Source: Guillardia theta CCMP2712 (lineage: Eukaryota; Protista; Cryptophyta). From it: a DNA stretch of 64,000 bases. Below, piece after piece: positions 3,200 to 43,915 of the stretch; the first letter of the stretch is position 1; every line of letters begins with the position of its first letter. The stretch spans positions 95,901 through 159,900 of the forward strand of contig NW_005434632.1 of assembly GCF_000315625.1 (NCBI RefSeq), written 5' to 3'. The notes under the pieces are model-generated. The model was not told where the DNA came from. It searched no databases and saw nothing but the letters and a program-made list of their open reading frames with translations. The translations under genes and the position numbers were made by a program.

Positions 3200-4380
3200 A
3201 ATCCGATCATGCCGCAGACGGTGCGGAAGCGGCTGAGGCCGCCCGGGGTGCAACTTGCAACTCGTCAACTTGGCAAGGGGCCGACCGTACGGTTCCGAGT
3301 GACTGAGACTCGCCCCGGCGGGGACCGCCCGCGGCCCGCCGTACTGACCCTCCGGGCGGCCAACTTCTTGATTTGCGTGGGGAAGCCTCAGGCCTACTAC
3401 GGAGTACTCCGAGGCAAGCCTTTCACTGGCGGGGTCACTGGCAATGATTCGAGCCCGCCGCCGCCGTCACGCCGGCGGAACCATCGGAGCAGGCTTGGAA
3501 CCCTCCGAGCCCCGGCGGCCGGCGGCTCGGCGCGCGGCGGGGGGCCGGGCACTGCGGCATGCCCCGCGAGCCTCGGAGCGCATCATTCGCGGCCAAGTTG
3601 CCTACAGACGTACGGTCACAGACGGTTTGGTACAGTACGGTTTTCGGAACTCGGAACCGTCGCGGGCGCCCGGCCGCGCGCGGCGCACCATGACAGTTGA
3701 GTCACTAAGACGCCCGGCCTGTGACTCGGAGGCTCGGTGACCGTACGTCGGACTGTTTGATCACCCGGCCGAAGTTCGCTGGCACAACTTAGCGGCGGGA
3801 CTCCTGAGTGGGAACGCCGGCGGCCGGTTCCGCGGCGCGGCCGCGCGCATCATGGCCCGGCCCCACCGGCCCGCCGCCCCGCCGCGCCCCGCCGCCGATC
3901 AGTCCGATCGGCCGCCACTAACGGCGGGGTTGAACTCTGGCCTCAGTGCCGCGCCCCCGAGCCGGCGCCCCCCGCAGTGACTCGGCCAAGGGCCGTCCCA
4001 GTTGAACGGCGGTCCGAACGCGCGTCAGTCGGACCGTCCGACGGTCGGTCCTTTACTCAAAGTTAAGTCGGTCACTGTGCGGCACCCGGTGACCGTGACC
4101 GCCGGAGAGTTCCGTTTTCCGAACCGTAAACGGCGGATCCCTGTCGGACAACTCCGATAGTAAACTCGACATGACTGAACTCGGATCACTGAGACGCCGC
4201 GGCTTCAACGGTTCACAGCGTGAAACGATAGGGGTTGAGAGGTTGAATTTAGGCAGATCATGCGCGAAGAGACGGATCTTGGTGTCAGGCTTATCTTTAC
4301 GTGGTCGGTGAGCCGCAGGGGGCCGCGGCGGCTCAGACCCCCTCCTCCTCAGCAGATTCTCCGGTTGACGGGCACATACC
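3200..4380. promoter_or_regulatory. GC/CpG-rich non-coding island between divergent genes
   Basis: Very GC-rich; built from short recurring words (GTGACTCGG, CCGTAC, CCGGCCCG, TCGGA) and local duplications. Lies between the HGD start (-) and ORF 5091 (+). Confidence 0.6.
4051..4066 (+). mobile_element. 16-nt micro-insertion CTTTACTCAAAGTTAA with 7-bp flanking direct repeat
   Basis: GTCGGTC at 4044-4050 and again at 4067-4073. Confidence 0.65.
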
Positions 4381-5090
4381 AAGAGTAGGGGTGAGTCCGG
4401 GCCCTGTTTTACACGGGTGGGTTGATGCGAAGTGAGATGATTGGGGTCATGTAACTGGTACGTTGTGCGAAAAGGTTACACGAAAAGACTTGATTTCGCT
4501 TCCATCCGGTTTAACACAGTGGGTGAAAAACTAGGATTTCACGTCAACATGTGTCTCAAGGTGTCGCAGCTGACCTGAACCTCAATGTCCTGTTACGGTA
4601 CATGGCTGGCAGCTGCCTGGGTTCTCTTCCTTGTGACCTTGTCCATTTAACTTAGAGCTCCAATCGAGAAAAACCACCACATACCCCATATGTGTTGGAC
4701 CCCCTACATGGCTGCTTCGTGAGAACCTGGCAGGCGGTTGGGAAGAGGCTCGAGTGGGTAGTACGTACGGAGTTTTTTCTCCTGAGGGTGGGTCCGATCA
4801 CGGGAGGGGGTAGGGGTGGTGGGTGTGAGTATTCGGATGGACGCATCGAAGAGTCCTAAGGCCCTTTTGAGCCAGAGATGGGGACAAGCACCGGTGTGGG
4901 TTCAGGGATCTCCGAGGAGGGTGGGTGGTCTCGAAGGTCATCGTAATCCTATGAGGGGTATAGGGGTGAGAAGCTCATAGTTCAAGGGGTGGGAGGTCTG
5001 GAGGAAGGGGGGGAGGGGGTGGTGTGGGGGAAACAGTAAAGGAGGCTACAAAAGAGGAAGAAGGCGAGAGCGCGGCAGAACGCAAGGAGC

Positions 5091-5648
5091 ATGTGCAGAG
5101 CATTCGAACTTCCTTCCAGGACCCCTCCTGCATCCTCCTGTGTTGCCCTCCCTCTCCAGTCCCTCGGGACTGACTCGACCAGCATGGTCAAGGACGGAGT
5201 CTGCTCTGCTCTCCCTTCCGAGAACATGAGCAAGGCTTCCTTCAAGGAGGTGATTCAAGAATCCACGGTCAAGAAGCAATGCCCCTTTAGCGCCGAGGGA
5301 TTCGATCTCCTTGAATGGATGCATCAGATGGAAGATGCTCTGACTGAGGTGCATTCAAGTGACGACGAGGTCGAAGAGGAAGAAGTTCTCTCCCAGGCGA
5401 AGGAGTCCTTTCCCGAGCCTGTCGAGCAAGACGACTTCCGCAAGACCGCCAGTGCTCCTCAAAGCCGCGGCTACGAGTTGCTCGAGGTCGACGACTTCCC
5501 CCTCTTCAAGACTCTCAGTGCTCCCATGTCTGTGACCAAGCTTCAATCAACGATTGCCGGCGGAGAGTTTGAGTTTGCGACGTTCAGTCGACCAGATCGC
5601 ACGCGAGCAGAGTACAACAGAGCTGTGGGACACTTTGCAAAGCAGTGA
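5091..5648 (+). CDS. Intronless small acidic protein, 'YNRA' family member 1
   Basis: 185-aa ORF followed by AATAAA. C-terminus LQSTIAGGEFEFATFSRPDRTRAEYNRAVG resembles ORFs 24033 and 55857. Confidence 0.75.
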   Translation: MCRAFELPSRTPPASSCVALPLQSLGTDSTSMVKDGVCSALPSENMSKASFKEVIQESTVKKQCPFSAEGFDLLEWMHQMEDALTEVHSSDDEVEEEEVLSQAKESFPEPVEQDDFRKTASAPQSRGYELLEVDDFPLFKTLSAPMSVTKLQSTIAGGEFEFATFSRPDRTRAEYNRAVGHFAKQ

Positions 5649-5968
5649 CGGCCAATAAACGCATGTTAACACGTATGATGAGAACACGGATTATAAGCTG
5701 TTTAGGAATGTAACAATAAATTTATTCATTTACTACCATCCACAGCGTTCGCCATGATCTTGCAAGAGCTTTATCTTTTCTTCATGTGTTTCATTAAAGC
5801 TTCATACGAATATGCGCAAGATCACTTTGATAATTGATCACCATTTGTGATGAAGCATACATTCGACAACATTTCTTCATTCAGCAAGTATGAAGTTGAA
5901 CATCGTTGACAAATGTCACGACCCCAACAACGTTCTGTGCCTGATCACGTGCGCTGAAGCTTTTGAAA

Positions 5969-7924
5969 TCAAAGAATCTGAAATGAATATCAGCATCTTT
6001 CTTAGATCAAGATGACCTCTCACAGGATCAGATCCGTTCCAGTCGACAACAGCTTGAGGCCACTTGGTCCTTATGCAGTGTTCAAGGGGAGGAGTGAGGT
6101 CAATGCTGGGATCCATCGGCCCCTTGCCGCAGTGAGAGTTTGAATTCTTCCAGGAAACAGAGAGTCGAATAGTCTCGTCTTGCTTGGCTAGCTCATCGTA
6201 GTAGTATAAATCAATCTCCTTGGATCCTTCGGAATTCTGCCAAATCGACAGTAAAGATGCCGTGATTGTATCATACACAATCACCTCGAGAGCATCTAGA
6301 TTGGCGGAGAAGAAAACAGAAAAATGAGACTCAGAGCAAACTACCCATACTGGGTACTTCGGATTTTTCAAGAGGGATCCAACTTCAATGCTTCTGTAAT
6401 GCTCAAAAAGGGAGAAAAAGCCAATCTGAAAACAGACATGAGAAACATCTGGCTTGAACAAAGCCTTTACTTCTTGGTCTCACCTCAGTCGAGCAGGATA
6501 TTCCGTTCAGCGTCAAGCCATCAAGCTCCTTGGTACCATCGAACACGTGGGGAACAGCCTTGCCCACCAGAAGGAGGTTAACCATCTCTTGGCTAAACAA
6601 AAGTTGTCATTCTGTGATTTCTGTGGCCATGTTGCTCAAACCTGCAATAGTTGTGTTGCCCCATAAGCTTCACGTTCGCGTCGAATGACTCCATGTCCTT
6701 GTGAACGTTGCTGGGTCCTCGAGAGAGGATGGCCGAGTAGAGGAAGCATGCAAGGCCTTGAGTGTCGTCCCCGAGCAAAGAAGCCTGCAAAGATATTCAG
6801 TGGCTTTCTTGCAACACATTAGCAGAGATCGACAGTACCTGGTGATCCTGTATCAATCTCCTCATATCAGCCCTGGAACTGACTTCGCAGACCATCAGGC
6901 ACTCTGTCAATCCATCGTCCTTGTAGTTCAAACGCATCTTCTCTTCGTCATCGCCATGAGAGGATCGCCGGCTTCCAGGTATCGCCAGAGTAGCCTTGCT
7001 TCCACCAGCTTGCCAAAGGATATCGCATACGGCATCCATCAGAGCTTCTCGGGCCTCACTCTCTCGAACCATTTCAGGATCAAACCTCCTCTTCTTCAAC
7101 AGCATGTTCTTGATCAGGCAAGCTTGCACACATGCCAGAATACCGCACGGCCCTCCCTCCTTCTGAACAAGCCCGTACTTTAGGTGCGCTGCCGCATTGA
7201 AGAAAAAACCTTGCTTCCATGAACCAGGGAACGAAATCTTTGCATTCCCAAACACTATCGACCTCAGTTCAAACGCTTCCTTAATGGAGATCCTGTTGAA
7301 CTTGAAGCTCTTCTTCTCTTTGGTCAGATCGGACGATTGATTTCGCAGGCTCATCGAAGCAAGATCGTCTCCAACGTCGTCAAGATCCTCCACAACACAC
7401 TCGTTGTGGTCCATCTGACTCTTGCTCACTCCATGCCCCCTCCTTCTGAACACGTTTGCCGCAGAATAATCGTTCCCTACAGAAATGCTAGCAACATTAT
7501 CGTCGTGATGACGATGATCCACGTGGAATTTCTCTATCCTTTCACTGTCAGCGTGCTTGTCGACTGGTTTCGGCTTGTGGTGCCCATCCACCTTGTCTTT
7601 GTCTTCCTTGTCCAAGACTTTTCCTGGTTTCTCAGACTTCTCAACCTCATCTGACTTCTTTTCTTTGAGAGTGACGGCCTTGTTGTGCAAGTACTCCACC
7701 AGAACCTCCAAACACGACGCAAGAGCCTCCTCCCCTCTCTCCTTGTTCCTCTTCACCATCTTCTCGATCCCCAGAGACCTCGAAAGCTCCGATCTCTTGG
7801 TAGTCCTCCCTTCCTTGGGCGGCGCCTCCTTGTTCAGGGCCTCCAGTGCTCCCTTGAGCCCCTTGCTGTTCAGGTACTCTCGCACTAGTGCCTCCCCGAG
7901 CGCTTCTACCTCCTCCCGCCCCAT
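5969..7924 (-). CDS. MINDY-3/4 (FAM188)-type deubiquitinase, MINDY4-like
   Basis: GLVQKEGGPCGILACVQA (catalytic Cys), LKNPKYPVWVVCSESHFSV (catalytic His), DLYYYDELAKQ, PPLEHCIRTKW...VDWNGSDP|IL*. N-terminus LisH-like (LVREYLNSKGL). Confidence 0.88.
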
Positions 7925-8548
7925 TGCAGCCCGGTTGTCGTTGAATGATGTCGTGGCCCGCATCCCCCCCAGGTTCGATTTATCTGAGGCGGGCCGATGA
8001 ATGGATCTGCAGGGTCCTTAGTGAGGAAAATGGGGGGGTAGTAGCCCATCCACCTTTTGGCGGGAAAACTTTCATTGTTTGGCAGGGCAGTGACCAACAT
8101 ACTTTGATATTTCAAATGTAAGACAAATATTTGAAGAAAAATTTCGAAAATTCGAAGGGAGTCTTTGAATTCATGGAGGGGATACCTTTCCAAACGGAGG
8201 GTAGTATTGAGAGACACGGGTATATTTGAGGACAAAATTAGGGGTCTAGGGGTGGATGCTGCTGCTGAGGGACCGGTGCGATAATGCACAAGTTTGGGTT
8301 GTCCCTGAGCCCGAGTTCACCTGGTGGGGGTTGATATACACAGGGTAGGGGTACTTCATTATATTCCTTAAGTAGCAGAGCTTGAATTATATTTAATAAA
8401 CAACTTAAGGAAAAACACTAAAGTCTATTTGATGCACTTGGCAATGAGCCAAAGTGAAATTATGGTGGGTGGGGTATTCAAAGTACCGGTGCAGAGGTCC
8501 ATCAGTATCATCAGGGGTAGGGGGTGGTAGAGCGCGCGGGAGGCAGTC

Positions 8549-10739
8549 ATGAGCCTTGTGTTCGACGAGTATGGCAGGCCCTTCATCATCATCAAGGAGC
8601 AATCTTCCAAGACCAGACTTAAGGGACTTGCTGCTCTCAAGGTAGTCTCTCCTCCCTCCCTCCCTCCCTCCTCCTTGCATGCCTCCTGTCTCTCTCCTGC
8701 TCTCTGCCCCTTGCGCTCCCTCCATTGGAACCCGTCGTGCTGTTTGCATATTCTGCACATCCTTTCACCAGCGTCTCCACCTGCGCCTCTCTGTCATCTA
8801 TATTTCCTCCGCATTGTTTGAAACTTGTCACACTCACCTCGCAACACGACCATTGCTGGTTTGTGAGGGCTGTTTGTTGACAAGAAACAAGAAATTAGAT
8901 GGTGTATGATTCATGGCATGACTACAATTGAATGTTGATCATTCGTTTCAACGGTGTCATGGTTTGTTTGCCTATATACTTTGATGAATGGACCCGCTTC
9001 AGGAAAATTTTACATCATTCTTCTCAATCATGCTGTTGTTTGTCGCTGCATTTCTCCTGTTGCCCAAACATTGGATTGAAGAAAGCAGAAAGCGGTTGTG
9101 ACTGGTTTACTTTCTTGCAGTCCAACATCATTGCTGCTCGATCAGTAGCTAGCACGCTGAGATCCTCCCTGGGACCGAAGGGTAAAAGCACGAGCTGCAA
9201 TCACCGTGTGTAACTAATGAAATGCAGGGATGGACAAAATTCTTGTGAGTGGCGATGGCGACGTCTGTGTTTCCAATGACGGAGCCACGATACTTGAGAG
9301 GATGGAGGTTGAGAATCAAATCGCAAAGCTCATGGTGGAGCTGTCCAAGTCTCAGGATCAGGAGATCGGGGATGGGACCACAGGAGTGGTGGTCCTAGCC
9401 GGAGCGCTGCTGGAGCAGGCAGAGCTTTTGTTAGACAGGGGCCTACACCCTCGCAGAATATCCGAGGGGTTCGAAGTAGCATGCAAGGTAGCATGCGACC
9501 ACCTGGACAAGATCTGCGACAAGATCCACTTCACCCCCCACGAGACCTCCGAGCTCCTTACTGTAGCGAAGACCACCTTGTCCTCCAAGATGTGAGACGC
9601 TCTTGCCCGCGCATGCTCAAAGTTGTAACGCTGATCCCCTGTGCAGTGTGACGAGGGCCTTGGATCAGATGGCGAACCTTGCTGTCAGCGCCATCATGGC
9701 TGTTGCTGACTTCGAGAGGAAAGATGTCAACCTGGACTTGATCAAGATGGAGGGCAAGGTAGGAGGGCAGATGGAAGACTCTATGCTGGTTTCCGGTATC
9801 GTGCTGGATAAGGACATCAGCCATCCTGGAATGGCCAAGACCATCAAGGACGCCAAGATCTGTATCCTGACATGTCCGTTTGAGCCGCCCAAACCTAAGA
9901 CCAAGCACAACATTCAGATCGACACTGTTGAGAAGTATCAGACGCTCTACAAGCAAGAGCAGGAATACTTCGTTGACATGGTGAAGAAGATCAAGGATTC
10001 TGGCGCAACTCTGGCCATCTGCCAATGGGGATTTGATGACGAGGCCAACCATCTCTTGTATCAAAATGAGCTGCCCGCTGTTCGCTGGGTTGGAGGAGTG
10101 GAGATCGAGCTGCTGGCTATCGCTACTGGAGCACGGATCGTTCCGAGATTCTCGGAGTTGACTCCTGAGAAGCTGGGCAAGGCCGGGGTCGTGAGGGAGG
10201 TCTCGTTCGGAACAACCAAGGACAAGATGTTGTTCATTGAGAATTGTGAGAACAGCAAGGCAGTTACCATCTTCGTGCGCGGAGCAAACAAGATGATCAT
10301 CGATGAGATCAAGCGCTCAATTCATGATGCTCTTTGCATGGTGCGCAACCTTGTTCGGGACAACCGGATCGTGTACGGCGGCGGATCTTCTGAGATCGCC
10401 TGCTCTCTCGCCGTGAGCGACGCAGCCAGCAAGGTCACGGGGGTCGACCAGTACGCCATGCGAGCCTTCTCGGATGCGCTGGAAGCGATTCCCATGGCCT
10501 TGTCGGAGAATAGCGGCCTCCCCGGGATCGAGAGCCTCGCGGCGTTGAAGCAGCGGCAGGTGCAAGAGAAGAATCCCTGGTTGGGGGTTGACTGCAAGAT
10601 GGTGGGAACCAACGACATGAAGAGCCAGAAAGTTCTGGAGACTCTCCACGGGAAGAAGCAGCAGTTCATGCTTGCGACGCAGGTTGTGAAGATGATCCTC
10701 AAGATCGACGATGTCATCTCACCCTCTGAGTACGAGTGA
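8549..10739 (+). CDS. CCT5: T-complex protein 1 subunit epsilon (4 exons)
   Basis: [24 protein letters not shown]|[65 protein letters not shown]. Confidence 0.98.
8824..8890 (+). ncRNA. Candidate intronic H/ACA snoRNA 5' hairpin with H box
   Basis: Lower stem CTTGTCA/TGACAAG, internal pocket, upper stem CCTCGCAA/TTGTGAGG, then AAACAA (ANANNA), in the unusually long CCT5 intron 1. Confidence 0.35.
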
Positions 10740-10755
10740 TGCTTATAAATGTACT

Positions 10756-12090: not shown

Positions 12091-13767
12091 ATGGTTGAGA
12101 CGAGGAGGAGCAGGTTGAGGACGGATGATGTGGGATCAGGGCATATGACATGGTCGGCGAGGCTCAACGTGGCGAACCTTCACCAGTCGTTCCGATGCTT
12201 CATGGTGTTCTTTGCATGCTACCTGCTAGTCTCGGTCGTCTTGACATCGATGGTGTTCTTCAAGAACTTCGACAACTTGGGCCAGCAGCTCATGTTTGCC
12301 TCGGACCACTGCCCTCGTCTGCTCCCCAGCAAGAGGATTCTTCTATGCTCCATCCTTCGCAACGCTAACCTCGTCCTTCCTGCATGGCGCAAGTCAGTCG
12401 TGGGCCTGGCGGAGTGCGTGAAGAAGAGAGGAGGGGAGCTCCTGGTGAGCGTGTGGAGCGACAAGAACACTGATGACGTCACGTCGCCGGAGCTTCAGAA
12501 GCTCTCGGAGCAGCTCAAGACCATTGGGGTCAAGCATGTCGTAGAGCACAACGGGAAAATGCCCGAGGAGAAGCAGAAGGCCAACAGGATCGTTCGGCTC
12601 TCCTGGGCCCGCAACCAGGCGCTTGAGCAGCTGGGCCTCGAAGTCCTTGACCATGTCGACGCCATTCTCTTCATCAACGACGTGCTGTGGACGGTGAAGG
12701 ACGCGATGAAGTTGCTGCACGAGCAGAGGAAGGAGGGTTACGACGCTCTTTGCGGGTTGGACTACATGTACAACTTCTACGATACCTGGGTGAGTCGGTC
12801 AGACAGCCTGGGCCCGTTCTCAGGTTTCTACCCGTGGGTACACAAGTCGGATGCGAGCCTGACCTCGCTGTCTGCTGCTGTCAACTCCAGGACCTTCCGT
12901 GTCGGCAGCTGCTGGAACGGAATGTTTGTCGCCAACGCCGTTCCCTTCGGTAGCAAGCACAAAGTTCGCTTCAGGACGGGGCAGCAATTCTACAGCGCCG
13001 TCCTGCTCCTGCGCTCTCCCCCCTCGGATCCTTCTGATGTCACCGGGGAGCTCCTGCACTTTCATGCTGGCCGCTCGTCTCCTGTCGACGGGCCGAGGAT
13101 GTACGAGCTCGCAGCGGGAGGGAAGGACGAGGTCGGTGTGCTCTGGGCGGGGAACCTGACGCAGGTGCTGGTCGTGTCCAACGGCAGCCGATACCTCTAC
13201 TCTGAGGCAGACGGGCAGGGGCAGGTCGTGCGCCCTCGAGCTGGGGCTCCAGCTGAGTTCAGCGGTCGCCTCCTCCACCTTCGTCCGATCAGTTACAAGG
13301 AGATCCGATGGCCCGAGTGTGAGCCGAGCAGCGAGTCGCTGCTGTATGCCGTTGACTTCCACAGGCTGGGCTACTCGAAGATGGCCGTCGACCCCAGCGT
13401 CCGCGTCTTCTACTCGTCGATCCACGTGGTTTTCTCCTTCTTCCTCGTGTATCCAGCTGAGGCGATGCTGAGCTTGTACTGGCGCCTGGTTGAGCTCCTC
13501 GGGTTGACACGGCGGGTTGAACGATGGGAGCTCCCATACGACAATAAGACGCTGGGCAGCACAACTTGCATCAGGCCCGAGCCTGACTTTCCTTTCTTTC
13601 TTCTCCCTCTGCTCCCCCTGGTCCTGGTCCTCCTTCTCTTCGCCATCGTGATTACTCGCTGGCACTTTGGCCGCAAGGCGCAGGAGGGAAAACGTACCAA
13701 CTTGGCCTACCGGAGACTAGGGTCAGCCTCTGAGCGGCATGAAAGGGACCTCGAGATGGCGATCTGA
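12091..13767 (+). CDS. CAP59/CMT1-like alpha-1,3-mannosyltransferase (GT69), intronless
   Basis: N-terminal TM; RIVRLSWARNQAL, ILFINDV, CGLDY, FYDTWVSR, VGSCWNG, SESLLYAVD; extra C-terminal TM. Confidence 0.85.
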   Translation: MVETRRSRLRTDDVGSGHMTWSARLNVANLHQSFRCFMVFFACYLLVSVVLTSMVFFKNFDNLGQQLMFASDHCPRLLPSKRILLCSILRNANLVLPAWRKSVVGLAECVKKRGGELLVSVWSDKNTDDVTSPELQKLSEQLKTIGVKHVVEHNGKMPEEKQKANRIVRLSWARNQALEQLGLEVLDHVDAILFINDVLWTVKDAMKLLHEQRKEGYDALCGLDYMYNFYDTWVSRSDSLGPFSGFYPWVHKSDASLTSLSAAVNSRTFRVGSCWNGMFVANAVPFGSKHKVRFRTGQQFYSAVLLLRSPPSDPSDVTGELLHFHAGRSSPVDGPRMYELAAGGKDEVGVLWAGNLTQVLVVSNGSRYLYSEADGQGQVVRPRAGAPAEFSGRLLHLRPISYKEIRWPECEPSSESLLYAVDFHRLGYSKMAVDPSVRVFYSSIHVVFSFFLVYPAEAMLSLYWRLVELLGLTRRVERWELPYDNKTLGSTTCIRPEPDFPFFLLPLLPLVLVLLLFAIVITRWHFGRKAQEGKRTNLAYRRLGSASERHERDLEMAI

Positions 13768-16994: not shown

Positions 16995-17094
16995 NNNNNN
17001 NNNNNNNNNNNNNNNNNNNNNNNNNNNNNNNNNNNNNNNNNNNNNNNNNNNNNNNNNNNNNNNNNNNNNNNNNNNNNNNNNNNNNNNNNNNNNN
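16995..17094. other. Assembly gap (100 N)
   Basis: Run of n characters. Confidence 1.
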
Positions 17095-17171
17095 TCCTGT
17101 CCTGTCCTGTCCTGTCCTGTCTGTCCTGTCCTGTCCTGTCCTGTCCTGTCCTGTCCTGTCCCTGTCCCTGT

Positions 17172-17237
<66 letters not shown>

Positions 17238-21170: not shown

Positions 21171-21193
21171 GTTTACTCATCGAAAGTTAAGTT
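21171..21193 (+). mobile_element. Variant micro-element GTTTACTCATCGAAAGTTAAGTT
   Basis: Same motif with 4 extra nt; AAAC on both sides (21167-21170 and 21194-21197). Confidence 0.4.
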
Positions 21194-21567
21194 AAACTCG
21201 ATGTGGGGATGTGGGCTAGTGACGAACAGTCAGCTTCATGGCTATATCGCCCCCATGAGACAGCGAGAGAGAGAGGCGGGGGAGGCAGAGAGGGAATGGT
21301 GAAGCCAGTTGACAAGTGATGATGTTGAAGTGCTAGAAGGAAGCGTGAACTAATGAAAGAGTGATACTTGCAATGGTTAACGAGCGAAGAGAAGAAGGAT
21401 TTGGTGGACCCTTTTGTTGAACCACTGCAATTTTAATTTGACTTAGAGTTGTCGAGCATACACATGGATCGTGAAGGGCTTACATGTATTGTCGATATGG
21501 AGAGCTCAGACGAGCATGCCCATATAGTTCTACACTCGTAATGCGAAACCCATGTTATGCTGCCCGT

Positions 21568-22362: not shown

Positions 22363-23008
22363 AACGAACTGGAACTTGAGGCTTCGGAACGCACCCGCTG
22401 ATGAATGATGAGAGTCCAAACTGTGACAAAGGACTGAGTGACAGGCTCTGACGCCGCCCTGAGCAGGCTCCGAGGCAGAAAGTTGGCCACCTCGGCCCGC
22501 GGACGGCCGCGGACTCGGATACTTGAAGTGAAACGGGCCGTAAGGCTTCCGGTGTCGGACCGTCAGATGTTAAGTTACTGTACGGGAAGCACGGTCGGGG
22601 TGGCAACCGTACTACGGTAGGGCCTGGCTGCCGCGCGGCCGGAGTCCGACCGCTGCCGCGCCGCCTGACTCTGTGAGTGGCCGTGCCCGGGCAAGTTCCG
22701 CCGGACTCCCGGAGTCCGGCGGGGACCGTACCTTCAGTTCGGAAGTTCCGATTCCCGCCGGGAGTCCAACGGACTCGCCGGGACTCACTTGCAGTTCACT
22801 GTCACTGGCAAGCAATCATTAAATCATCGCCGACGCCGGGTGTACAGGTACGGTCACTGTACACTACCGTACTAAACCCTACTTCGAGTCCGGCGAGAAA
22901 CTTGAAAGGCTCTCCGCCGGGCGGCCGGGGCCCGGCCCGGGCCGCCGGGCGGCCCGATGGTTTCAAGTAAGTTGACCCGCCGTGCGGTCGGGCCCAGCGA
23001 TCACCGGC

Positions 23009-23021
23009 TTTCTTTACTCAA
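23009..23021 (+). mobile_element. 13-nt micro-insertion TTTCTTTACTCAA with 6-bp flanking direct repeat
   Basis: ACCGGC at 23003-23008 and 23022-23027. Confidence 0.55.
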
Positions 23022-23170
23022 ACCGGCGGGTCGCTCAACCGTCACGTTGTGACCGTCCGACGGCCCGGCCCTTCGGAACCATCCGATCCGGGTGCCGGGC
23101 CGGGCCGGTCCGGTCCGATCAGGGTCAGTATTGGCGGTCACGGCAAAAAAATAAGAGTTGTACAGCCATG

Positions 23171-23200
23171 ACTTTACTCAAAGTTAAGTTAAGTTAAAAC
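23171..23200 (+). mobile_element. 30-nt micro-insertion ACTTTACTCAAA(GTTAA)3AAC with 9-bp flanking direct repeat
   Basis: ACAGCCATG at 23162-23170 and 23201-23209. Confidence 0.7.
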
Positions 23201-24032
23201 ACAGCCATGCATTTGCCATGCCAATTCCGTGATCAGTCTTTAGGAAAGACAGACTTCCCCAATTATCTTTACTACCTGTGTGAGACGGTCCCGGATCTCC
23301 GATCCTCAGACACCCCCTACCCTGTTTTTCGATAGAGATGATTGGGGTACTCGATTCAGATACGAGCAAATTGAGAGCTGAAGTCAGCTAAAAGTATAAA
23401 ACATATCTACTGACACCAGATCCCAACGCTTCATCGCTTCTCCGCATTACTAGATTTCAAAAGTTGTATTTTTCTGTTAGAGAAGTTTCGAAACAGTTGC
23501 TTTAGGATCAATGCTGCCTGCTGTCATGTAGTAAAAGAAGTCATCGCTCAAGTACCCACCCCCATTTGGCTCCGACCTTTTGCTAGGTCACGGCTTTGTT
23601 TTATGTATCCTTTGACCCTATGGTCTTCTTTTTCCTTTGATGTACAAGAGTAAAATTAGGGAACATCTTCACCTCCTCTTTTCGGCAACATCCTAGACTA
23701 CCCCCACCCGCTGTTGTAGAGTCTCCTTCCAGGTTTCTATGTATTCTATGTACCACTACCCCCGATTCATGCTGACCAATCTGAACACTTACCCCATGTA
23801 CCACCAACGGTCATATCTGTCTCTATGAACTCATACGTCTGTGCTTACCTGAGTTTTACTAGCATCTCAATTGATGAAATTTCTACCTTACCCTTGTCAA
23901 GTGTATACCTTAAAAAATCTTTACGACCACCCCTACAAAAAATTGGTGTACCCCTACCTACATTATTCCCGCGCGACCTCTCGCCGGCAGGCAATATAAA
24001 ATAGGCTGCACACGACCTCCGTGTAACTCGCG

Positions 24033-37049: not shown

Positions 37050-37860
37050 GGCCGAGGCACTGAGAGAGACTCAGTCTGCAGACTAAGAGACTCCGAGTCT
37101 CCGGGCCCGGCGGGCCGGGGTCACGGGGGCCGGGTCCCGGGACTCCCGGATCACTGCGTCGGCGGCTGCGTCCCCGGGCCGGGTAGTACCGTACCCGTGA
37201 TCCGTGTGAGTGCCACGGTCTGATCATGCCACAGTGGAGTCTTCAGATACGGCAGTACAGTGTGTCGGACCGTACAGATCAGGCTTTGCCAGGGTCCGCC
37301 GCCGGTTGGACTCCGGGATTCGGCGGACGCCTGGGCCGGCGCTACTTAAAACGGCGCCCCCGGGAGGCGGGGCCGGGCGGCGCGGCGGTTGAGCCGGGCG
37401 GCGACAGCGGGGCCCGGGGGCGGGGGGGCTGTTTACCATCGCGAGGGCCCTAGAGGGCCAAGCTTGCGTCACCCGGCCGCGGTCTCCAGCGGCCTCCGGG
37501 GTGCGTGCGGCAAACTCGCCCCCGGGTTTGACCATGGTCCGATCTTGTTCCATCTGAGGTCGAGATGATGTCTGCATTGCTTTGGCATAGTACAAGTCTA
37601 ACAAACTTGTCACTCTGTTAAACCGGAGTCCGTCCGCCGAGTCCGGCCGCGACTCGTGACTCGTGACTGGAGACCCGCAGTCCGAGCGGCAGCCCGGCCC
37701 GGGGGCGGCCCGCCCGGCCGCGACGGTTCGGAGTTCCGAACTGAAAGCCTGGGCCAGTGGGAAGTCCGATCATTCTGACAACGGTATCGCTCATAAGTCA
37801 AGCGAACTGTACCAAGACTTAACTTTGAGTAAAGTGTACCAAGACAGTCCTACCCTACCG
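37050..37860. promoter_or_regulatory. GC/CpG-rich non-coding island between divergent genes
   Basis: Same word usage (GACTCGTGACTCGTGAC, CCGGGCCCGG, GTACCGTAC); between the RAP gene (-) and the K+ channel (+). Confidence 0.6.
37819..37834 (-). mobile_element. 16-nt micro-insertion CTTTACTCAAAGTTAA (minus strand) with 11-bp flanking direct repeat
   Basis: TGTACCAAGAC at 37808-37818 and 37835-37845. The insert is identical to 4051-4066. Confidence 0.75.
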
Positions 37861-38365
37861 TGACTGACCCAATAAGTTTTATTCCGTCAGCCATTTTATA
37901 GACAATAATATATTTTAATTTCACAACGGTAGTAATGTAGTGCTATGATACGATCAAGAGGGCCTGGTCAAATACCTATGTCATTTTGTACCAGCACTTA
38001 TTATTTCGTACTGAATTGAAGCTTTTATATATCTAGTAACCGAACCAAAAGGCTTTTTATAAGCTCTAACAGGCAGGGGTGGGGGTGGTGGTAAGGTGAG
38101 CTAGTGATGGGTGGTGTGCCCATCGAAGAAGGGGAATGAGGGGGTAGGGGTACACGGGCATGGACAGATGGGGAAACACACAAGACAGCCTCGGACACAT
38201 CAATAGGGGTGGGGGTAGGGGGTAGTGCCGTTGCCGGGGAGTGCGGGAGAAGTCGTCCGTCGCTATGCAGATTCTTGGCTCGGGCAGCGATGGGTGCAAA
38301 GAAGAGGCAGAGGAGGAGATGAGAGAGTGAGAAGGAGGAGTCAGAACTCTGTGAACATGCGTTCA

Positions 38366-41284
38366 TGGACATCTCTCGTCATCGCAAGGAGTTGAGATCC
38401 CCTCGACACCCTCCTTGGGCTGATATCATTTCTTCGAACCCCTGACCTAGGTCCCGGTCTCTGCTATCCTCCCCAATGATTTCTGGGGTTTGATGCAGGA
38501 TTGCAATTTGCTAAGCTGTCAGCTGTGAATATTGTCTATCTCATTTCTCTAGAATGCTTGTCAACTCAGCTCGCAATGGGTTATCAAGAGCGAAAGACAT
38601 CAACAACAGAAGGAGAAGTGTCAGAGTCAACCGGAATGAATCGACACGTAAGAGCGTTGCTGCTTCTTTTTGTGTCATGAAGATATTGACAACATGACCT
38701 TCTAGACGACGTGAAGCGAACGTCAGATTCAAAACATGGTCGACCGAAGAGACGTAATGTCCTCTCATTTTTGCAGAGCCGATCTTTCACGGAGACGGTC
38801 GAGAAGAAGGTAACATAGTTTGTGTCCATGCATTCTTGTGCCGAGGTGACTCATAACATTTACAGCGGACTAAATGGGAAAATTTCCTTCTCTTTTGGCG
38901 CTTGTTGGTCAGCAGACAAGGACCCTCAGATGACATGTATCATCTGCACCTGCCACGAACAGGAAAACCCGATTGGCTCTACATCTCTTGTGTTGGAAGA
39001 TATCGTCATTGTTGGGACTTCATCTCTCTCCTAGCTGTCCTCTATTGCACGTTTTCTGTCCCTTATGACATGTGCTTCAATCCTCCTTCAACCAATGTCT
39101 TCAGCTGCATCGACATGGCGATCGAAGCGTTTTTCGTGACAGACGTTGTGTCTAACTTTTTCACATCGTATCAGGACCATTGTGGTGAAGTGACCTCGAA
39201 ATTTATGATTGCTTTGAATTACTGCAGAAGTTGGCTGGTTATTGACTCAGTCTCATCAATTCCCTCTGAGATAATTTCACGCATTGCCAGCTCCTTATCT
39301 ACATCCCAGCAAAGCTCAAATATCTCAGTCCTGAATCATCTCAGAATAATCCGAATTTTGCGTCTGACCAAACTCCTGCGGCTCTTAAAATTGAACTACA
39401 TCATTGAAGCGATACAACTTCGATTCCCTATGTTGGAACCTGTCCTGGGACTCTTTCGACTAATCTTTATGATGATGCTGGTTGCTCACGTACAAGCATG
39501 TGTCTTCTATTATGTTGCTACTTTAAACATCCAGAACTCGTGGATCTCAAAGTTTCATTTCAATTGTTGCAACGAAGAAAGAGTTCCATCTCAATATCAG
39601 GGGTCTCAGGTTTGTTTCGACCCTGCATTGCAACCTTCCTTGATGGTTTTGTATATCAATTCTTTGTACTGGGCTTTTACGACGCTAACTTCTGTCGGAT
39701 ATGGAGATATTACTCCCTGTAATTATTTAGAATTCATTTACACTACTTGCAGTATGGTCATTGGAAGTGGTATCTTTGCGTATGTTGTCGGCAATATAGC
39801 TGCTGTCGTGAGTACGCAGAAAGGGAGTGAGATACGATACAAGACCAAGTTGAAAGATCTACAGGAATATCTGAATATCAGAACAGTTCCCAAGTCTGTA
39901 GCATTTCCAATCCTACAGCAGTGTATGAATCAATGGTCCAGAAGTGTCTACGATGAAGAGTTTCTGTTGCGAGAAGTCAATGGGCAACTGAGAAGGGAAA
40001 TGATCCTCGCAGTTCACGGCAGTACCCTCTTTAACATCTCACTGTTCAGAGAGATTTCCCGGGAGAACGAAGACTTCATGGTGGAGTTGTCTCTGAAGAT
40101 GGGATCCACAATCTTCTTGAAGAATGAAGAGCTTGACTTGTCGGATTTTGAGGGGACAGGAGCGAGCATGTATTCGATCAAGTCGGGGACGGTAATATTC
40201 GTTCATACTCAGATATGGCTGGGAAGGAGCTGACGAGCATCGGCAGGTTTCAGTGACTTGTAATGAGCTGGGAGAGAACAAAGTCGAGAACATTCACGCT
40301 GGAGGCATCTTGAACTTCAAGCCCATGATACACTCGGTTCGCATGCAATCCTGTCTCTCTATCTCGCTGTTAATTTGTTCCATCAGGTTGTTCAGCGATT
40401 GTTACACGAACAATATTTTTCAAAGACGGAAAGCGGGGTCATCGCAAGGGCTGTGAACTTTGTCGAGACCTTTCAATTGAGGGCTCAAGATGTCGAGGCT
40501 TGCATTCTGAAATGCGACACGCATCACGATATCTTCGACAAGATCAAACAATTCTGCGCAGGTTGATGCTCATCATTGCTGTAAAGGCTGCTTGTGCCCT
40601 GACTCTGGTTGTCAGACGATTACAAGGAATGTCAGGGCGAGGAGCAGGTGTTCATGGGATACGTAGATCTGGTCTGTCGTCATGTATGTTTGAACATGTC
40701 ATGATCTCATTCATTGTTTCCTTCCTGACCAGGAACGAGCTCAGTCACTGCACGAGAGCAATCAAGACGGTTCACGAGGCTCGAGGATTGAGGACTATCA
40801 GAGTCAGCACAATAATGATTTCATAGCCAAGGTAAGACACCCTGGTGTGGGGGAAAAGCTCAGCACAGCATTTGTTGCAGAGCGCGGACTACAAGGTAGA
40901 GGAGCATGAAGAGGAAATGCCCAACGGCAAAGACAACCACGTTTTTGAGATCCACAAGCAAGAGATTTTACCTGATTTGAACCTGGATGTTGAACTTTCC
41001 AACGATGTCTCTTCCTGTACAAACCACACAATACCGTGAGTGCAGCCCTGGCATCTTCTATGACTGATTGGGAGATTGATTATGATCTGTACAGTCTGCA
41101 GTGCATTGATAATGAGGATCAAGTAACAATGTCGCGAAAAGAATTCGACATGTTGAACAGGTTGTCTTCGTACCTTTTTCCTATTGAAGGACTGACATGT
41201 ATTGTTAGTATGCTTCATCAAAGCGCGGAGAAAATTGGCAAGTTCCTGAAAGAAAGAAAAAACAATCTCCGGAGCCAGGGTTAG
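38366..41284 (+). CDS. Voltage-gated K+ channel with cyclic-nucleotide-binding domain (EAG/KCNH/HCN-like); ends approximate
   Basis: S1-S6 segments, S4 LRIIRILRLTKLLRLLKL, pore SLYWAFTTLTSVGYGDITP, C-linker and CNBD (MYSIKSGTV). Confidence 0.9.
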
Positions 41285-41602
41285 ATGCCGTTGAGGATTG
41301 CATCATGGAGAACACTCTGGAAATTGTACTTGAAGATGTATTTTTTGGCCTTTCAAGTTTGAAGGCCTGTAACATGATAGATTAAGATGTGAAAGAATTT
41401 GTTTTTGTGTCCAATTCTTGCCCCTTGGCTATTCGTTCCGACTCTACTATCACACAAACAACAGGATTTCATGCAGAAAACAAGGTAACGCGGTCACAAC
41501 AACATTCAATATCGCAATAAAGAGCATCGTTGGATGGGTTTACTCTCAAAAGAAGGACATGCAATTTGTTTACAGCGGATTCTTGTCTCTCAATCGTCTC
41601 AA

Positions 41603-43281
41603 TCATCTTGCTCCTTTGGGTGTTTTGGTTAGAATAGACCGCGTTTGGAGGAACATGGCTCAAACCTCGCTTCTTGGATTTCTTGTTTCCTGGGAGCCTC
41701 CCAACGTCTTCGAAAGATCGTTTTTTGAGAATCTGTTGTTTCATTCGTCATCATATGTCTACTTACAGCACTTCCCCTTGCCTTGGATTCTTGCTCGCTT
41801 AAATCTTGATGATTGGCGACATTGTCGAATGTCAAGTTGTCATACTCCTCAAATCCGTCGATCGAAGCTCCCTTCCGCTTCATCTGTTTGGTGCCGTGCA
41901 GACAGTCAGATCAACGGCCCTCAGTCTCCTAGTCATCCCCGCTGAACAGGCTGCGGGCACAGCAAACCATGAAAAGCTTTTACCTGCTTCAGACGATGAC
42001 GTTCTTTCTTGCTCACTTGAAGGCGGAGGAAATTGTCTTCTTCAAACTTGGTTCTAGCCATGACTGTCAGCCTCTCCTCTCCGCTGTTTCCCAGCTTTTA
42101 CCTGTGTGCAAGCTCTTCGTCCTTGTACTGCGAGGAAGCTCCAATGGATTCCCTGGACTAACATCAGACTCGAGTTTGCAGAGCTAGTCATGTAACATTT
42201 CAACAGGAGCGTCGTCAAACTGCTCCCGAAGTGCCATGACAATCTCACTCTGTTACAGTCTGACGTCAGTAGTGGGTCAAGAAAACTCCTGCTCCCCACC
42301 TTGGCTGCCTTCTTAGCTTTTCTTTCATGCGCTCTCCTTTTCTTGGCCTCCTCCCTTCAAATTGCCATGAGCTTGTACAAGTCATCATCAGTGGGCTCAC
42401 TTGTCTTCGAAGTGCATGGCAGAAATCTTTGGGGGTCGGTAAACCCCTTGTTTGTCAGCTGCATCTCTATCTCCCTCTTCTCCATCTTTCACAACCAATC
42501 AGCAAACAGCTTCCCACGTCTCCCATGCACCTTCTTCATCTCCCTCCTCTCGCGCCCCTGCTGTCTCTCCGGGTGCAAGCAGAGCCTCGGGGTTCGGCTT
42601 GAATCGAAGCTGAAGAGGAGTCACCCCGACTTGGCAATGCTTGCCTTCTCCTTACCGCGTTCTCCTGCTCCGCCGTGGACGACTCCGTGTTAGTGTTGAT
42701 CTTGAGCAGCTTGTCCATCTGGTATTTCAGCTGCAAGACTGCTCAGTGCCGAGGAGTCTCGTCAGGGGTCAGACCTTAGTGTCCATCGGTCTCATCTTCT
42801 CCATGAAGATCCTCAGCTCGATGAGCTTCTTGATGACAGGATGGTTCATGATCGACATCCCGTTGAGCTTCAGGAACAGGTAGAAGGACAGGTTCGTGCA
42901 GTAGCTGAGCAGCAGCTGCAGCTTCAGCTCCAGGTACGAGACTCCGTTGCTAGTCGGCAGCGCCCCTTCCTTGACCCTCTCAGTGTCTGCAGACAGTTGC
43001 GTCCGTACTTCTGCTATCTGGCTCTTAAAGTCTCTGAGCATGGCGATCAGGTCCGGCGCTTCAGCTGTCAGCACCTCCTCCCGCAGTTGTTGGGAGACGT
43101 CGGCAAAGGCGTCAACAGCCTGATCTGTCTCTTTCACATGCTCTTTGTCGTGATCGACAATCTTCTTCGCCGACTTCTTCTTCTGCGCTGAATTCACTGC
43201 TCCTTTTGCCTTGGGTGTGGAGCTCGGAGTATTTTGATTTGCTGCTTTGTTTCTCACCTTCTCTCTGCTAGTTTCAACCAT
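41603..43281 (-). CDS. NGDN: Neuroguidin/Lcp5 (Sas10/Utp3/C1D family)
   Basis: GVSYLELKLQLLLSYCTNL, HPVIKKLIELRIFMEKMRPMD, LKYQMDKLLK, GVYRPPKISAMHF. Confidence 0.88.
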
Positions 43282-43739
43282 TTTGTCTTCCTGGCCCCTG
43301 AAATCAGATCGCCATGTTCACCCTTGCCCTGCCATAAAATTCTCTAGTAAGATTATTGAAACTTCGTTTCTTGACCTGCCCCCTCTGTAATAAGTTTCCC
43401 CCTTCTTCTGCAGCAACGGCAGAGATCAAAATGTATTCCATTCCCTCGTCTCTCTTTCATTAGATGGATGATTTCTCCTTTCTCTCCACCTCTCCTTCGA
43501 GTTACGCGCAAATATTTCCCCTGGTCCCCCGCATTAAACCTCCTTCCCCCTCCACTATCCCGCAATCTTCTTCCTCATCTTTCCGTGTCTTCGATCCAAG
43601 GCCAGCTTTCGTGACCACATCCCTCCCTTCGCTCTTCCTCCACTCCTCACTCCTCCTCCTCTCCTCCCTCCCTGAACCACGACCGCACGTGCATTTCTGC
43701 AGCAGTAACAAACAACAAGTCCGCCCCGGCAGGTCAAAC

Positions 43740-43915
43740 TCTCTAGTGAAATGTCTCCGACGGCCGCCGGAGGCACTGGCCCGGCCCCGGACCCCCGGCC
43801 TCCGGCCCACCGGGCCTGCGTTTCACCGGGCGCGACATGCCTTTCTTGACCCTCACATCACGATTGTTTACTCAAAGTTAAGTTAAATTATTAATAGAAA
43901 AGTTTACTCATCCAA
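43740..43915. promoter_or_regulatory. Short GC-rich island plus micro-element copy (GTTTACTCAAAGTTAAGTTAA, 43866-43886) and a partial copy (43902)
   Basis: Between NGDN (-) and ZIP (+). No convincing flanking direct repeat for these copies. Confidence 0.55.

What the first reader, a model, noticed from the sequence alone, without database searches (positions are those of the whole stretch)
4044..43915. Micro-element CTTTACTCAAA(GTTAA)n inserted with variable-length target-site duplications: a minimal retroposon?
Seen: the same short sequence occurs at 4051-4066, 23009-23021, 23171-23200 and 37819-37834 (minus strand). Each copy is flanked by a different perfect direct repeat: GTCGGTC (7 bp), ACCGGC (6), ACAGCCATG (9) and TGTACCAAGAC (11). 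Weaker copies lie at 21171, 43866 and 43902. The inserts at 4051 and 37819 are the identical 16-mer. The 5' boundary is almost fixed, while the 3' end carries 0-3 GTTAA units. The core can fold as a hairpin (CTTT-ACTC-AAAG), and in two copies the duplication begins with GT, continuing the tail. Established: variable-length TSDs, a 3' stem-loop and a short tandem-repeat tail are hallmarks of target-primed reverse transcription by L2/CR1/RTE-type LINEs and their SINEs. Inference: these are 13-30 nt retroposed units made only of a recognition hairpin and tail. The fixed 5' end does not fit random 5' truncation and suggests a dedicated tiny RNA template or a strong RT stop. About 6 copies in 64 kb would imply very many genome-wide.
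Basis: partly seen in the sequence, partly recalled or inferred. Interest (0 to 1): 0.9.

Follow-up and report, generated by a model that had tools for sequence, protein, structure and literature searches.

The report
Ultra-short tips of an R2-like LINE
The repeated 16-letter "micro-element" is not a tiny retroposon of its own: it is the last few bases of an ordinary 3.6-kb reverse-transcriptase-encoding jumping gene of the alga Guillardia theta, whose copying usually breaks off after 10-60 bases and has left over a thousand stubs in the genome.

Summary
CTTTACTCAAAGTTAA sits at window 4051, 23172 and 37819(-) with perfect 7-, 9- and 11-nt flanking duplications. The genome (Guillardia theta, 87 Mb) holds 934 exact copies of the 16-mer and 1,268 of the 12-mer, against 0 and 10 for reversed controls.

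The "fixed 5' end" is the reverse complement of the fixed 3' end (...TTAACTTAACTTTGAGTAAAG-3') of a 3,645-bp non-LTR retrotransposon. That element has one ORF with a reverse transcriptase whose closest solved relatives are all R2 proteins, followed by a Cys/His motif and a probable restriction-like endonuclease.

Copies form one collinear series from about 10 nt to full length: median about 40 nt, 72% under 100 nt, 7% at 1.5 kb or more. Raw DNA reads show the same 3'-anchored gradient. The "(GTTAA)n tail" is internal sequence: two units in 500 copies, three in only 2. The hairpin is not supported.

Flank repeats of 7 nt or more occur in 34% of copies against 6-7% in controls. Extra T-rich bases at the 3' junction and 1-5 nt of microhomology at the 5' junction fit target-primed reverse transcription that aborts early.

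Verdict: a new member of a known kind, with modest interest. The scan noted similar 3'-tip micro-insertions elsewhere in this genome (s1-430506, s1-430520).

The parts
4051..4066 (-). Micro-copy: the last 16 (up to 18, counting 2 nt shared with the TSD) nt of the LINE. The element's sense strand is the minus strand.
   Evidence: Exact 16-mer; 100% match to the last 18 nt of the reference copy L043.
4044..4050 (.). Target-site duplication GTCGGTC, the copy next to the element's 3' end (primer side).
   Evidence: It abuts the element end with no extra bases.
4067..4073 (.). Target-site duplication GTCGGTC, the copy at the truncated (5') junction. Its first two bases, GT, also match the element (microhomology).
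23012..23022 (-). 11-nt micro-copy (CTTTACTCAAA), preceded by three extra T (23009-23011) and flanked by CCGGC/ACCGGC (23003-23008 and 23022-23027).
   Evidence: The pattern of extra T at the 3' junction recurs in other copies. A similar 9-11-nt copy with a 7-nt TSD lies at L043:4659-4683. Individually weak.
23171..23200 (-). 30-nt insert: one extra A, then the terminal 28 nt in the rare three-GTTAA form, then one extra C. Element sense is on the minus strand.
   Evidence: The three-unit form occurs only twice in the genome.
23162..23170 (.). TSD ACAGCCATG (left copy).
23201..23209 (.). TSD ACAGCCATG (right copy).
37819..37834 (+). Micro-copy: the last 16-18 nt of the LINE, with element sense on the plus strand (reads TTAACTTTGAGTAAAG).
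37808..37818 (.). TSD TGTACCAAGAC at the truncated (5') junction.
37835..37845 (.). TSD TGTACCAAGAC next to the element's 3' end.
43867..43887 (-). 21-nt micro-copy lacking the terminal base (reference positions 22..2 from the 3' end). No clear TSD.
   Evidence: About 15% of sampled copies likewise start 1-4 nt inside the terminus.
21172..21196 (-). Diverged micro-copy (TTTACTCA, 3-nt insertion, AAAGTTAAGTTAAA), probably older.
   Evidence: Read by eye; not recovered by blastn-short.
43902..43910 (-). A 9-mer, GTTTACTCA. Not distinguishable from chance on its own.

Best explanation
The motif is the 3' terminus of an autonomous, non-site-specific, R2-like non-LTR retrotransposon of Guillardia theta. 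The reference copy is L043:1001-4645 on the minus strand: 3,645 bp with one long ORF carrying RT, then a Cys/His motif, then a probable restriction-like endonuclease.

Proposed mechanism (shown and inferred steps are marked below):
1. The element's protein nicks chromosomal DNA at loosely specified sites.
2. The freed 3'-OH primes reverse transcription at, or 1-4 nt inside, the RNA's 3' end (...UUAACUUAACUUUGAGUAAAG), sometimes after a few extra, mostly T, bases.
3. Synthesis usually aborts within the first 10-60 nt.
4. The short cDNA is joined to the upstream target end through 1-5 nt of microhomology.
5. A second-strand break 7-11 bp away gives a TSD in a quarter to a third of events. The rest have shorter TSDs, none, or probably small deletions.

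The window's 11-30-nt inserts are such extreme 5'-truncated copies.

Shown: the collinear length series, the ORF orientation, the RT domain, TSD enrichment, junction features, copy numbers and the read-depth gradient.
Inferred: the nicking enzyme, why synthesis stops early, and the end-joining step.
For: - The 16-mer is always the fixed end of a repeat that extends collinearly by 16 to more than 3,000 nt.
- At least 7 copies at 98-100% identity share the same far (5') boundary, giving a 3,645-bp unit. An independent ENA contig starts its homology at the same base.
- A 1,138-codon ORF on the opposite strand ends 162 nt before the terminus and carries RVT_1. A family profile hits only R2 proteins in the PDB at E = 5e-8. 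The top four Foldseek hits of the C-terminal model are R2 proteins, followed by PD-(D/E)xK nucleases.
- Length survival in 80 copies: 56% reach 40 nt, 28% reach 100 nt, 10% reach 600 nt and 7% reach 1,500 nt.
- Raw 38-nt DNA reads give a depth of about 8 on the unique flank, about 2,600-3,600 on the last 40 nt and about 200-530 on the ORF.
- Flank direct repeats of 7 nt or more occur in 34% of copies against 6-7% in shifted and permuted controls. At 6 nt or more the figures are 50% against 16-20%.
- In the clean set (17 of 74), TSDs are 7-11 nt, with 0-4 extra bases at the 3' junction and 1-5 nt of overlap at the 5' junction in 10 of 17.
- The base before the element is T in 44 of 80 copies against a 21% background.
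- Both strands are hit about equally, 661 and 607.
- 5' truncation and a second-strand break position that varies between truncated copies are established for R2 (PMC7650587).
Against: - Most copies (about two thirds) show no TSD of 7 nt or more, so for them insertion by TPRT is inferred by analogy.
- No empty site was available. The three window sites are single-copy, and no related genome or second strain could be compared.
- The endonuclease assignment rests on a weak collinear alignment, conserved acidic motifs and a low-confidence model (pLDDT 53, best E 0.037). A C-terminal-only profile gave only spurious PDB hits.
- No RNA reads covered the ORF in the 6% of one RNA-seq run that was read, so current expression of the parent is not shown.
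- Copies are strongly clustered: 11 of 99 adjacent intervals are 500 bp or less, against about 0.8 expected. Simple random insertion does not explain this.
Confidence: 0.9

Rival explanations
1. One reading: a minimal 13-30-nt retroposon with its own dedicated tiny RNA template. It would consist of a recognition hairpin plus a (GTTAA)n tail, have a fixed 5' end, and be mobilised in trans by an L2/CR1/RTE-type LINE.
For: - Lengths pile up at 16-55 nt.
- Contigs of run X1 show micro-copies in tandem with 3-nt fillers, e.g. 1031->1001 'CGG' and 1036->1002 'TCT'. This would fit an RT reaching the 5' end of a short template and jumping to another.
Against: - There is no discrete unit length. Lengths run continuously from about 10 nt to 3,645 nt, collinear with the RT element.
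- The fixed end is the 3' end with respect to the ORF.
- The tail is fixed at two units, with three units only twice in the genome.
- The hairpin is not supported.
- No separate source locus was found.
Confidence: 0.04
2. Endonuclease-independent capture. Short cDNA or RNA-templated fragments of the element's 3' end are used as filler when the host repairs random double-strand breaks by microhomology-mediated end joining, rather than arising from element-directed nicking.
For: - About two thirds of copies lack a clear TSD.
- There is microhomology at the junctions.
- Copies cluster, and inverted or tandem pairs lie close together, e.g. L022 with 3' ends facing across 10 nt and L017 with 3' ends outward.
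Against: - Random fragment capture would not put the exact RNA 3' terminus at the junction in nearly every copy. Most sampled copies start at the last base and about 15% start 1-4 nt inside it, and the terminal 12-mer occurs 1,268 times against 10 for the control.
- TSDs of 7-11 nt are five-fold enriched over controls, which indicates staggered nicks.
- The T bias before the junction suggests a preferred priming context.
Confidence: 0.05
3. The end of a DNA transposon or MITE, or an excision footprint. The 16-mer would be a terminal inverted repeat left behind after excision or internal deletion.
For: Some inverted pairs of the motif exist: L022, L015, L007.
Against: - TSD length varies from 5 to 11 nt instead of being fixed.
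- Solitary copies have only one end and no partner TIR.
- The long form encodes a reverse transcriptase and has no inverted terminus at its other end.
Confidence: 0.01

Closest known systems
R2 and non-site-specific R2-like retrotransposons (restriction-like-endonuclease LINEs)
   Same: - A single ORF with a central RT whose only solved relatives are R2 proteins.
- A Cys/His motif and a probable PD-(D/E)xK nuclease C-terminal to the RT.
- No AP-endonuclease domain detected and no poly(A) tail.
- 5'-truncated copies, a variable second-strand break, and extra bases at the 3' junction. 5' truncation and the variable break are described for R2 in PMC7650587. Non-templated additions and template jumping by R2 RT are from my own knowledge.
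   Different: - Not targeted to 28S rDNA or to any single site. Flanks differ between copies and the window sites are unique DNA.
- No recognisable N-terminal zinc-finger or Myb motifs were detected.
- No HDV-like ribozyme or other Rfam family in the element.
- The copy population is dominated by stubs of 10-60 nt, which I have not seen reported for R2.
5'-truncated L1 copies and short processed pseudogenes in human (Terai et al. 2010, PMC2831318)
   Same: A fixed 3' end, a variable 5' end and TSDs. An excess of very short retrocopies is attributed there to a truncated or degraded template during reverse transcription (abstract). Microhomology at the 5' junctions of truncated L1 is from my own knowledge.
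   Different: - Those copies are made by an APE-type LINE primed on poly(A), and 'short' there means 300 bp or less.
- Here the tail is a unique, non-poly(A) sequence, so stubs as short as 10-20 nt can be recognised.
- Here the stubs derive from the element's own RNA rather than from mRNAs.
CR1/L2/RTE-type LINEs and their SINEs
   Same: Variable TSDs, no poly(A), and heavy 5' truncation (own knowledge).
   Different: - Those clades carry an N-terminal AP endonuclease and often a 3' microsatellite tail.
- Here no APE domain is found, the relatives are R2-type, and the apparent GTTAA repeat is a fixed internal dimer.

Membership tests
Non-LTR (LINE) retrotransposon inserting by target-primed reverse transcription | Encodes a reverse transcriptase | tested here: met
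   Pfam RVT_1 at 33.4 bits against a cut-off of 29.6. The family profile hits R2 RTs at E = 5e-8.
Non-LTR (LINE) retrotransposon inserting by target-primed reverse transcription | Fixed 3' end with variable 5' truncation; no LTRs or TIRs | tested here: met
   A collinear series from 10 nt to 3,645 nt anchored at the 3' terminus, and a read-depth gradient. The two ends are unrelated.
Non-LTR (LINE) retrotransposon inserting by target-primed reverse transcription | Target-site duplications of variable length at the two junctions | tested here: met
   Repeats of 7 nt or more occur in 34% of copies against 6-7% in controls. The clean set has 7-11 nt. Not every copy has one.
Non-LTR (LINE) retrotransposon inserting by target-primed reverse transcription | Empty (pre-insertion) sites carrying one TSD copy | not testable with these tools
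   The window sites are single-copy.
R2 superfamily / restriction-like-endonuclease (RLE) LINEs | Cys/His motif and a PD-(D/E)xK endonuclease C-terminal to the RT | tested here: inconclusive
   - A C-x2-C...H-x3-C motif, then conserved GD and (L/I)xDxS(x)SH motifs. Relative P0004 reads KPDL...DLVISH.
- A weak collinear alignment to the R2 RLE region.
- The model has pLDDT 53 with the motifs on adjacent strands.
- The top four Foldseek hits are R2 proteins, but the best E is 0.037.
- A C-terminal-only profile gives only spurious hits.
R2 superfamily / restriction-like-endonuclease (RLE) LINEs | No N-terminal AP (APE-type) endonuclease | tested here: met
   No Exo_endo_phos or other domain besides RVT_1 at E <= 0.01. 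This is absence of a hit, not proof.
R2 sensu stricto | Site-specific insertion into 28S rDNA | tested here: not met
   Copies have unrelated flanks and lie in unique DNA.
   The length distribution is continuous, and the only fixed far end is that of the 3,645-bp element.
MITE / DNA transposon | Terminal inverted repeats and a TSD of fixed length | tested here: not met
   One-ended copies with TSDs of 5-11 nt.

The most novel reading that the evidence does not exclude
The stubs may be more than passive by-products of poor processivity. They could be a natural record of a distinct abortive-initiation phase of target-primed reverse transcription by an R2-like enzyme.

The loss rate is roughly 3% per nt over the first 50 nt, against less than 0.2% per nt beyond 100 nt. 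On that basis more than 70% of genomic nicking events end as scars of 100 nt or less.

Alternatively, the enzyme may preferentially use short, protein-protected 3'-tip fragments of its RNA as templates. The tandem stubs with 3-nt fillers would then come from end-to-end template jumping.

Either way this would be a LINE whose main genomic footprint is more than 1,000 micro-scars that standard repeat annotation would miss. The clustering of copies would hint at re-nicking near earlier insertions.
Probability: 0.2. Interest if true: 0.5.

Novelty: new member of a known kind. Interest (0 to 1): 0.3.

Why it matters
It removes a candidate for a 'new class of minimal retroposon': the thing is an ordinary LINE seen from the wrong strand.

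What remains of interest is quantitative.
- An R2-like but non-site-specific element in a cryptophyte has a copy population that is about 70% stubs under 100 nt (median about 40 nt).
- Because its 3' end is a unique sequence rather than poly(A), even 10-20-nt products of aborted retrotransposition can be recognised and counted. That is impossible for L1.
- This gives a natural data set of more than 1,200 events on where TPRT initiates, how often it adds extra bases, where it aborts and how the 5' end is joined.
- It shows that repeat annotation with the usual length cut-offs would miss most insertion events of such a family.
- I found no description of it in the searchable literature.

Tried and rejected
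1. A naive search for the left-flank word anywhere within 1.4 kb downstream was no better than the control (6 against 5 copies with 8 nt or more). I replaced it with a search confined to each copy's truncation point.
2. I looked for paralogous empty sites for the three window insertions. All three regions are single-copy.
3. Rfam, with permissive thresholds, on the whole element gave no hit. In particular there is no HDV-like ribozyme.
4. The RNA fold of the 162-nt 3' UTR is not more stable than shuffles (z = -0.98), and the proposed 4-bp hairpin is absent from the MFE structure.
5. A C-terminal-only profile against the PDB gave only spurious weak hits, such as PqqC.
6. The structure prediction of the C-terminal domain was poor (pLDDT 53). 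The fold search points to R2 but is below significance.
7. A TSD for the full-length copy L043 is inconclusive. There is only a 6-mer, ACTGTG, set back 9 nt from the 3' junction.
8. I tried to test whether the second abundant R2-like family (P0003) leaves the same stubs.
9. The ENA contig carrying P0001 is the same element at 98.9% identity but lacks the 3' terminus, so it says nothing about the RNA end.
10. RNA reads lay only on the terminal 120-200 nt, and 117 of the 120 laid reads lay only partly on the stretch. They come from stubs embedded in other transcripts, not from the parent. That is no evidence either way on whether the parent is expressed, since only about 6% of the run was read.
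11. Literature searches for Guillardia non-LTR elements and for abortive or extremely short LINE copies found nothing specific.

Full report
**1. The observation.**
- CTTTACTCAAAGTTAA lies at 4051-4066 between two copies of GTCGGTC.
- The same 16-mer lies on the other strand at 37819-37834 between two copies of TGTACCAAGAC.
- A 30-nt version lies at 23171-23200 between two copies of ACAGCCATG.
- An 11-nt version lies at 23012-23022, preceded by TTT, between CCGGC repeats.

TTTACTCAAA with up to one mismatch occurs 9 times in the window against 2.7 expected. The 16-mer with up to three mismatches occurs 4 times against 0.29 expected. Of the weaker sites, 43867-43887 is a real 21-nt copy lacking the terminal base, 21172-21196 is a diverged copy with a 3-nt insertion, and 43902 is only a 9-mer.

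The assembly gap at 16995-17094 abuts a (TCCTG)n microsatellite and is more than 4 kb from any copy. Continuity across it cannot be established and is irrelevant to the finding.

**2. Genome-wide.**
The assembly is 87.1 Mb in 669 contigs. It holds 934 exact copies of the 16-mer (reversed control 0) and 1,268 of the 12-mer CTTTACTCAAAG (control 10; 661 forward and 607 reverse).

The organism is Guillardia theta CCMP2712.
- The protein a source names GUITHDRAFT_122725 matches this genome at 100% identity.
- A window ORF has the cryptophyte Hanusia phi as its best non-self hit, at 70%.

**3. What the motif belongs to.**
In the first 30 loci the sequence to the right of the 16-mer is shared between copies but breaks off at a different point in each. 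All-against-all comparison gave shared lengths from 19 to more than 240 nt.

Using a long copy as query, many copies at 98-100% identity ran on for 641 nt and beyond. A 10-kb fetch showed 3 kb shared between copies. A search with the far part showed that at least seven copies end at one and the same base.

The unit is therefore L043:1001-4645, 3,645 bp. An independent ENA metagenome contig carries the same element at 98.9% identity, with homology starting at that same first base.

It carries Pfam RVT_1. So the motif, read as ...TTAACTTAACTTTGAGTAAAG-3', is the 3' end of a reverse-transcriptase-encoding element. The end that varies is the 5' end.

This is the signature of a non-LTR retrotransposon copied from the 3' end of its RNA.

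**4. Which kind of LINE.**
- The single-sequence search against solved structures hit only Bombyx R2.
- A profile of six family members hit only R2 proteins, over the RT (9nl3, 9dou, 8gh6; E from 5e-8). It also gave a weak second stretch that lines up the C-terminus with the R2 endonuclease region.
- Downstream of the RT there is a C-x2-C...H-x3-C motif, followed by conserved GD and LxDxSxSH motifs. The relative P0004 has the classical KPDL...DLVISH.
- Pfam sees no AP endonuclease.
- A C-terminal-only profile gave nothing meaningful.
- An AlphaFold model of the last 288 residues is poor (pLDDT 53), although its core places the two acidic motifs on adjacent strands.
- Foldseek ranks four R2 proteins first (best E 0.037, probability 0.97), followed by MspJI, viral cap-snatching endonucleases and RecE, all of them PD-(D/E)xK enzymes.

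I take the element to be R2-like with a restriction-like endonuclease, but that last point is not proven. It is not R2 proper, because copies have unrelated flanks and sit in unique DNA. No Rfam family, including HDV-like ribozymes, matches the element.

**5. The copy population.**
With the natural copy L043 as reference, 80 sampled copies anchored at the terminus have these lengths: 100% reach 12 nt, 72% reach 30, 56% reach 40, 40% reach 50, 28% reach 100, 15% reach 200, 10% reach 600 and 7% reach 1,500. The median is about 40 nt.

The loss rate is therefore about 3% per nt over the first 50 nt and below 0.2% per nt beyond 100 nt. That arithmetic is mine.

Raw 38-nt ChIP-seq DNA reads give the same picture without relying on the assembly. 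Depth is about 8-11 on the unique flank, 2,600-3,800 on the last 40 nt, about 1,000 at 100-120 nt and 200-530 in the ORF.

Most short copies are alone in their 3-kb locus and 94-100% identical to the parent. About 15% start 1-4 nt inside the terminus, which explains the 'G-first' copies in the window.

**6. The supposed tail and hairpin.**
The 23-mer with two units occurs 500 times. The three-unit form occurs twice in the whole genome: the window copy at 23172 and locus L028. 'Zero or one unit' is simply earlier truncation.

The 162-nt 3' UTR folds no better than shuffles (z = -0.98), and the CTTT/AAAG stem is not in the MFE structure.

**7. Junctions.**
A first, unrestricted TSD scan was uninformative. 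When the search was confined to the truncation point, TSDs of 7 nt or more appeared in 11 of 87 copies and in none of the shifted or swapped controls.

The offset-free test used the longest common word between the 30 nt before the fixed end and the 42 nt around the truncation point. It gave 7 nt or more in 34% of copies against 6.8% (shifted flank) and 6.1% (permuted flanks), and 6 nt or more in 50% against 16-20%.

In the 17 clean cases TSDs are 7-11 nt.
- Six abut the element end exactly.
- Others carry T, TT, TTT, TC, A or CGCG between the TSD and the element.
- Ten show 1-5 nt that could belong either to the element or to the TSD at the truncated junction.

Over all copies, the base preceding the element is T in 44 of 80 against a 21% background, and TT in 26% against 5%. 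This fits either a few A residues at the RNA end or a priming preference. I cannot tell which.

The window's three textbook TSDs are thus the clean end of a broader distribution in which many events have short TSDs, none, or perhaps small deletions. Variation of that kind is reported for truncated R2 copies (PMC7650587).

**8. Mechanism.**
The simplest account is target-primed reverse transcription that starts precisely at the RNA 3' end and usually aborts within 10-60 nt. The short cDNA is then joined to the other side of the break through microhomology.

Two refinements remain open.
- Contigs of run X1 show stubs in tandem separated by 3 nt, e.g. 1031 back to 1001 with CGG, and 1036 back to 1002 with TCT. 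I recall that end-to-end template jumping with added bases is a property of R2 RT. If these are jumps, the templates themselves may have been short RNA fragments, as was proposed for short human pseudogenes (PMC2831318).
- Copies are clustered. In the first 100 listed 12-mer places, 11 of 99 adjacent intervals are 500 bp or less, where about 0.8 is expected (my arithmetic).

Part of the clustering is later duplication: a 69-nt tandem unit in L069, copies about 1.8-2 kb apart in L065, and a palindrome in L015. Part looks independent, for example L022 with two 3' ends facing across 10 nt, plus L017 and L007. I have no tested explanation for this. Earlier scan notes propose self-targeting, but in my sample most stubs are solitary in unrelated DNA.

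**9. Expression.**
In about 6% of one RNA-seq run, 120 reads lay on the stretch, confined to its terminal 200 nt or so. Of these, 117 lay only partly on it, in both directions and with diverse loose ends. None lay on the ORF beyond position 1200. They derive from stubs embedded in other transcripts. Expression of the parent is neither shown nor excluded.

The window stubs lie outside any long ORF.

**10. Rivals.**
- A dedicated tiny template is contradicted by the continuous length series and by the orientation.
- A DNA-transposon end is contradicted by one-ended copies, variable TSD length and the RT ORF.
- Break-repair capture of cDNA fragments could account for the TSD-less copies and the clusters. 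It does not explain why the exact RNA terminus lies at the junction in nearly every copy, nor the five-fold TSD enrichment.
- A conserved protein-binding site is unsupported, but could not be tested across species.

**11. Novelty and verdict.**
Fixed 3' ends, 5' truncation, variable TSDs, extra bases and microhomology are textbook LINE features, and non-site-specific R2-like elements are known (PMC7650587). I found no paper describing this family, or stub-dominated LINE populations, in cryptophytes.

I rate it as a new member of a known kind. It has an unusually extreme truncation profile, which can be measured only because the terminus is a unique sequence. Interest is modest (0.3).

Earlier notes of this scan (s1-430506, s1-430520) describe 3'-tip micro-insertions with TSDs on other pieces of this genome. 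I did not verify that they concern the same family.

Noticed in passing
window 17095-17210: A long (TCCTG)n/(TCCCTG)n microsatellite directly after the assembly gap (16995-17094). It is probably the reason for the gap.
   Followed up: no
L043:4659-4683 (G000:C4, just beyond the 5' end of a full-length element): GGCCTAC|TTTTTACTCAA|GGCCTAC: a 9-11-nt fragment of the same terminus with a perfect 7-nt TSD. It shows that stubs below the 12-mer detection limit exist.
   Followed up: partly
G000, many contigs (e.g. C12:882751-884880, C63:399667-408394): A second R2-like family (GUITHDRAFT_122725 type, 29% identical to the element studied) is abundant, with more than 100 matches at 95-100% identity and several per locus.
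   Followed up: partly
L022:1499-1694 (G000:C2:404514-404555): Two copies in opposite orientation, with their 3' termini facing each other across a 10-nt spacer (AAACCCATCT). Both strands of the same 10 bp appear to have served as primer, or the site was hit twice.
   Followed up: partly
L015:1440-1740 (G000:C2:123628-123836): Two 22-nt stubs about 190 bp apart in inverted orientation. Their outer flanks are themselves inverted repeats about 86% identical over about 240 nt, so a palindromic duplication formed after, or along with, the insertion.
   Followed up: no
L069:1400-1620 (G000:C7:902196 region) and L065 (G000:C4:352597-358123): Stubs amplified secondarily: a 69-nt tandem repeat unit carrying a 20-22-nt stub (3-4 units), and 18-nt stubs recurring about every 1.8-2.0 kb. 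Some of the genomic copy number is therefore not independent insertion.
   Followed up: no
genome-wide (list): Stubs are strongly clustered: 11 of 99 adjacent intervals are 500 bp or less, against about 0.8 expected. The window itself holds 5-7 copies where about 1 is expected. The cause is unknown.
   Followed up: partly
L085 (ENA ERZ930064, contig k127_69022): A public metagenome assembly holds the same element at 98.9% identity. Upstream of it lies a 79-nt internal fragment of another copy's 3' UTR. So the organism, or a very close relative, is present in that sample.
   Followed up: partly
window 12091-13767 (+): An intron-less 558-aa ORF with Pfam PF11735. Its closest non-self relative is in Hanusia phi (70% identity).
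   Followed up: no
L035:2284 and L038:2891 (G000:C39, C22): Long copies with internal rearrangements. L035 joins position 783 from the 3' end directly to position 2677 (a deletion of about 1.9 kb). L038 has a breakpoint with about 64 nt missing.
   Followed up: no
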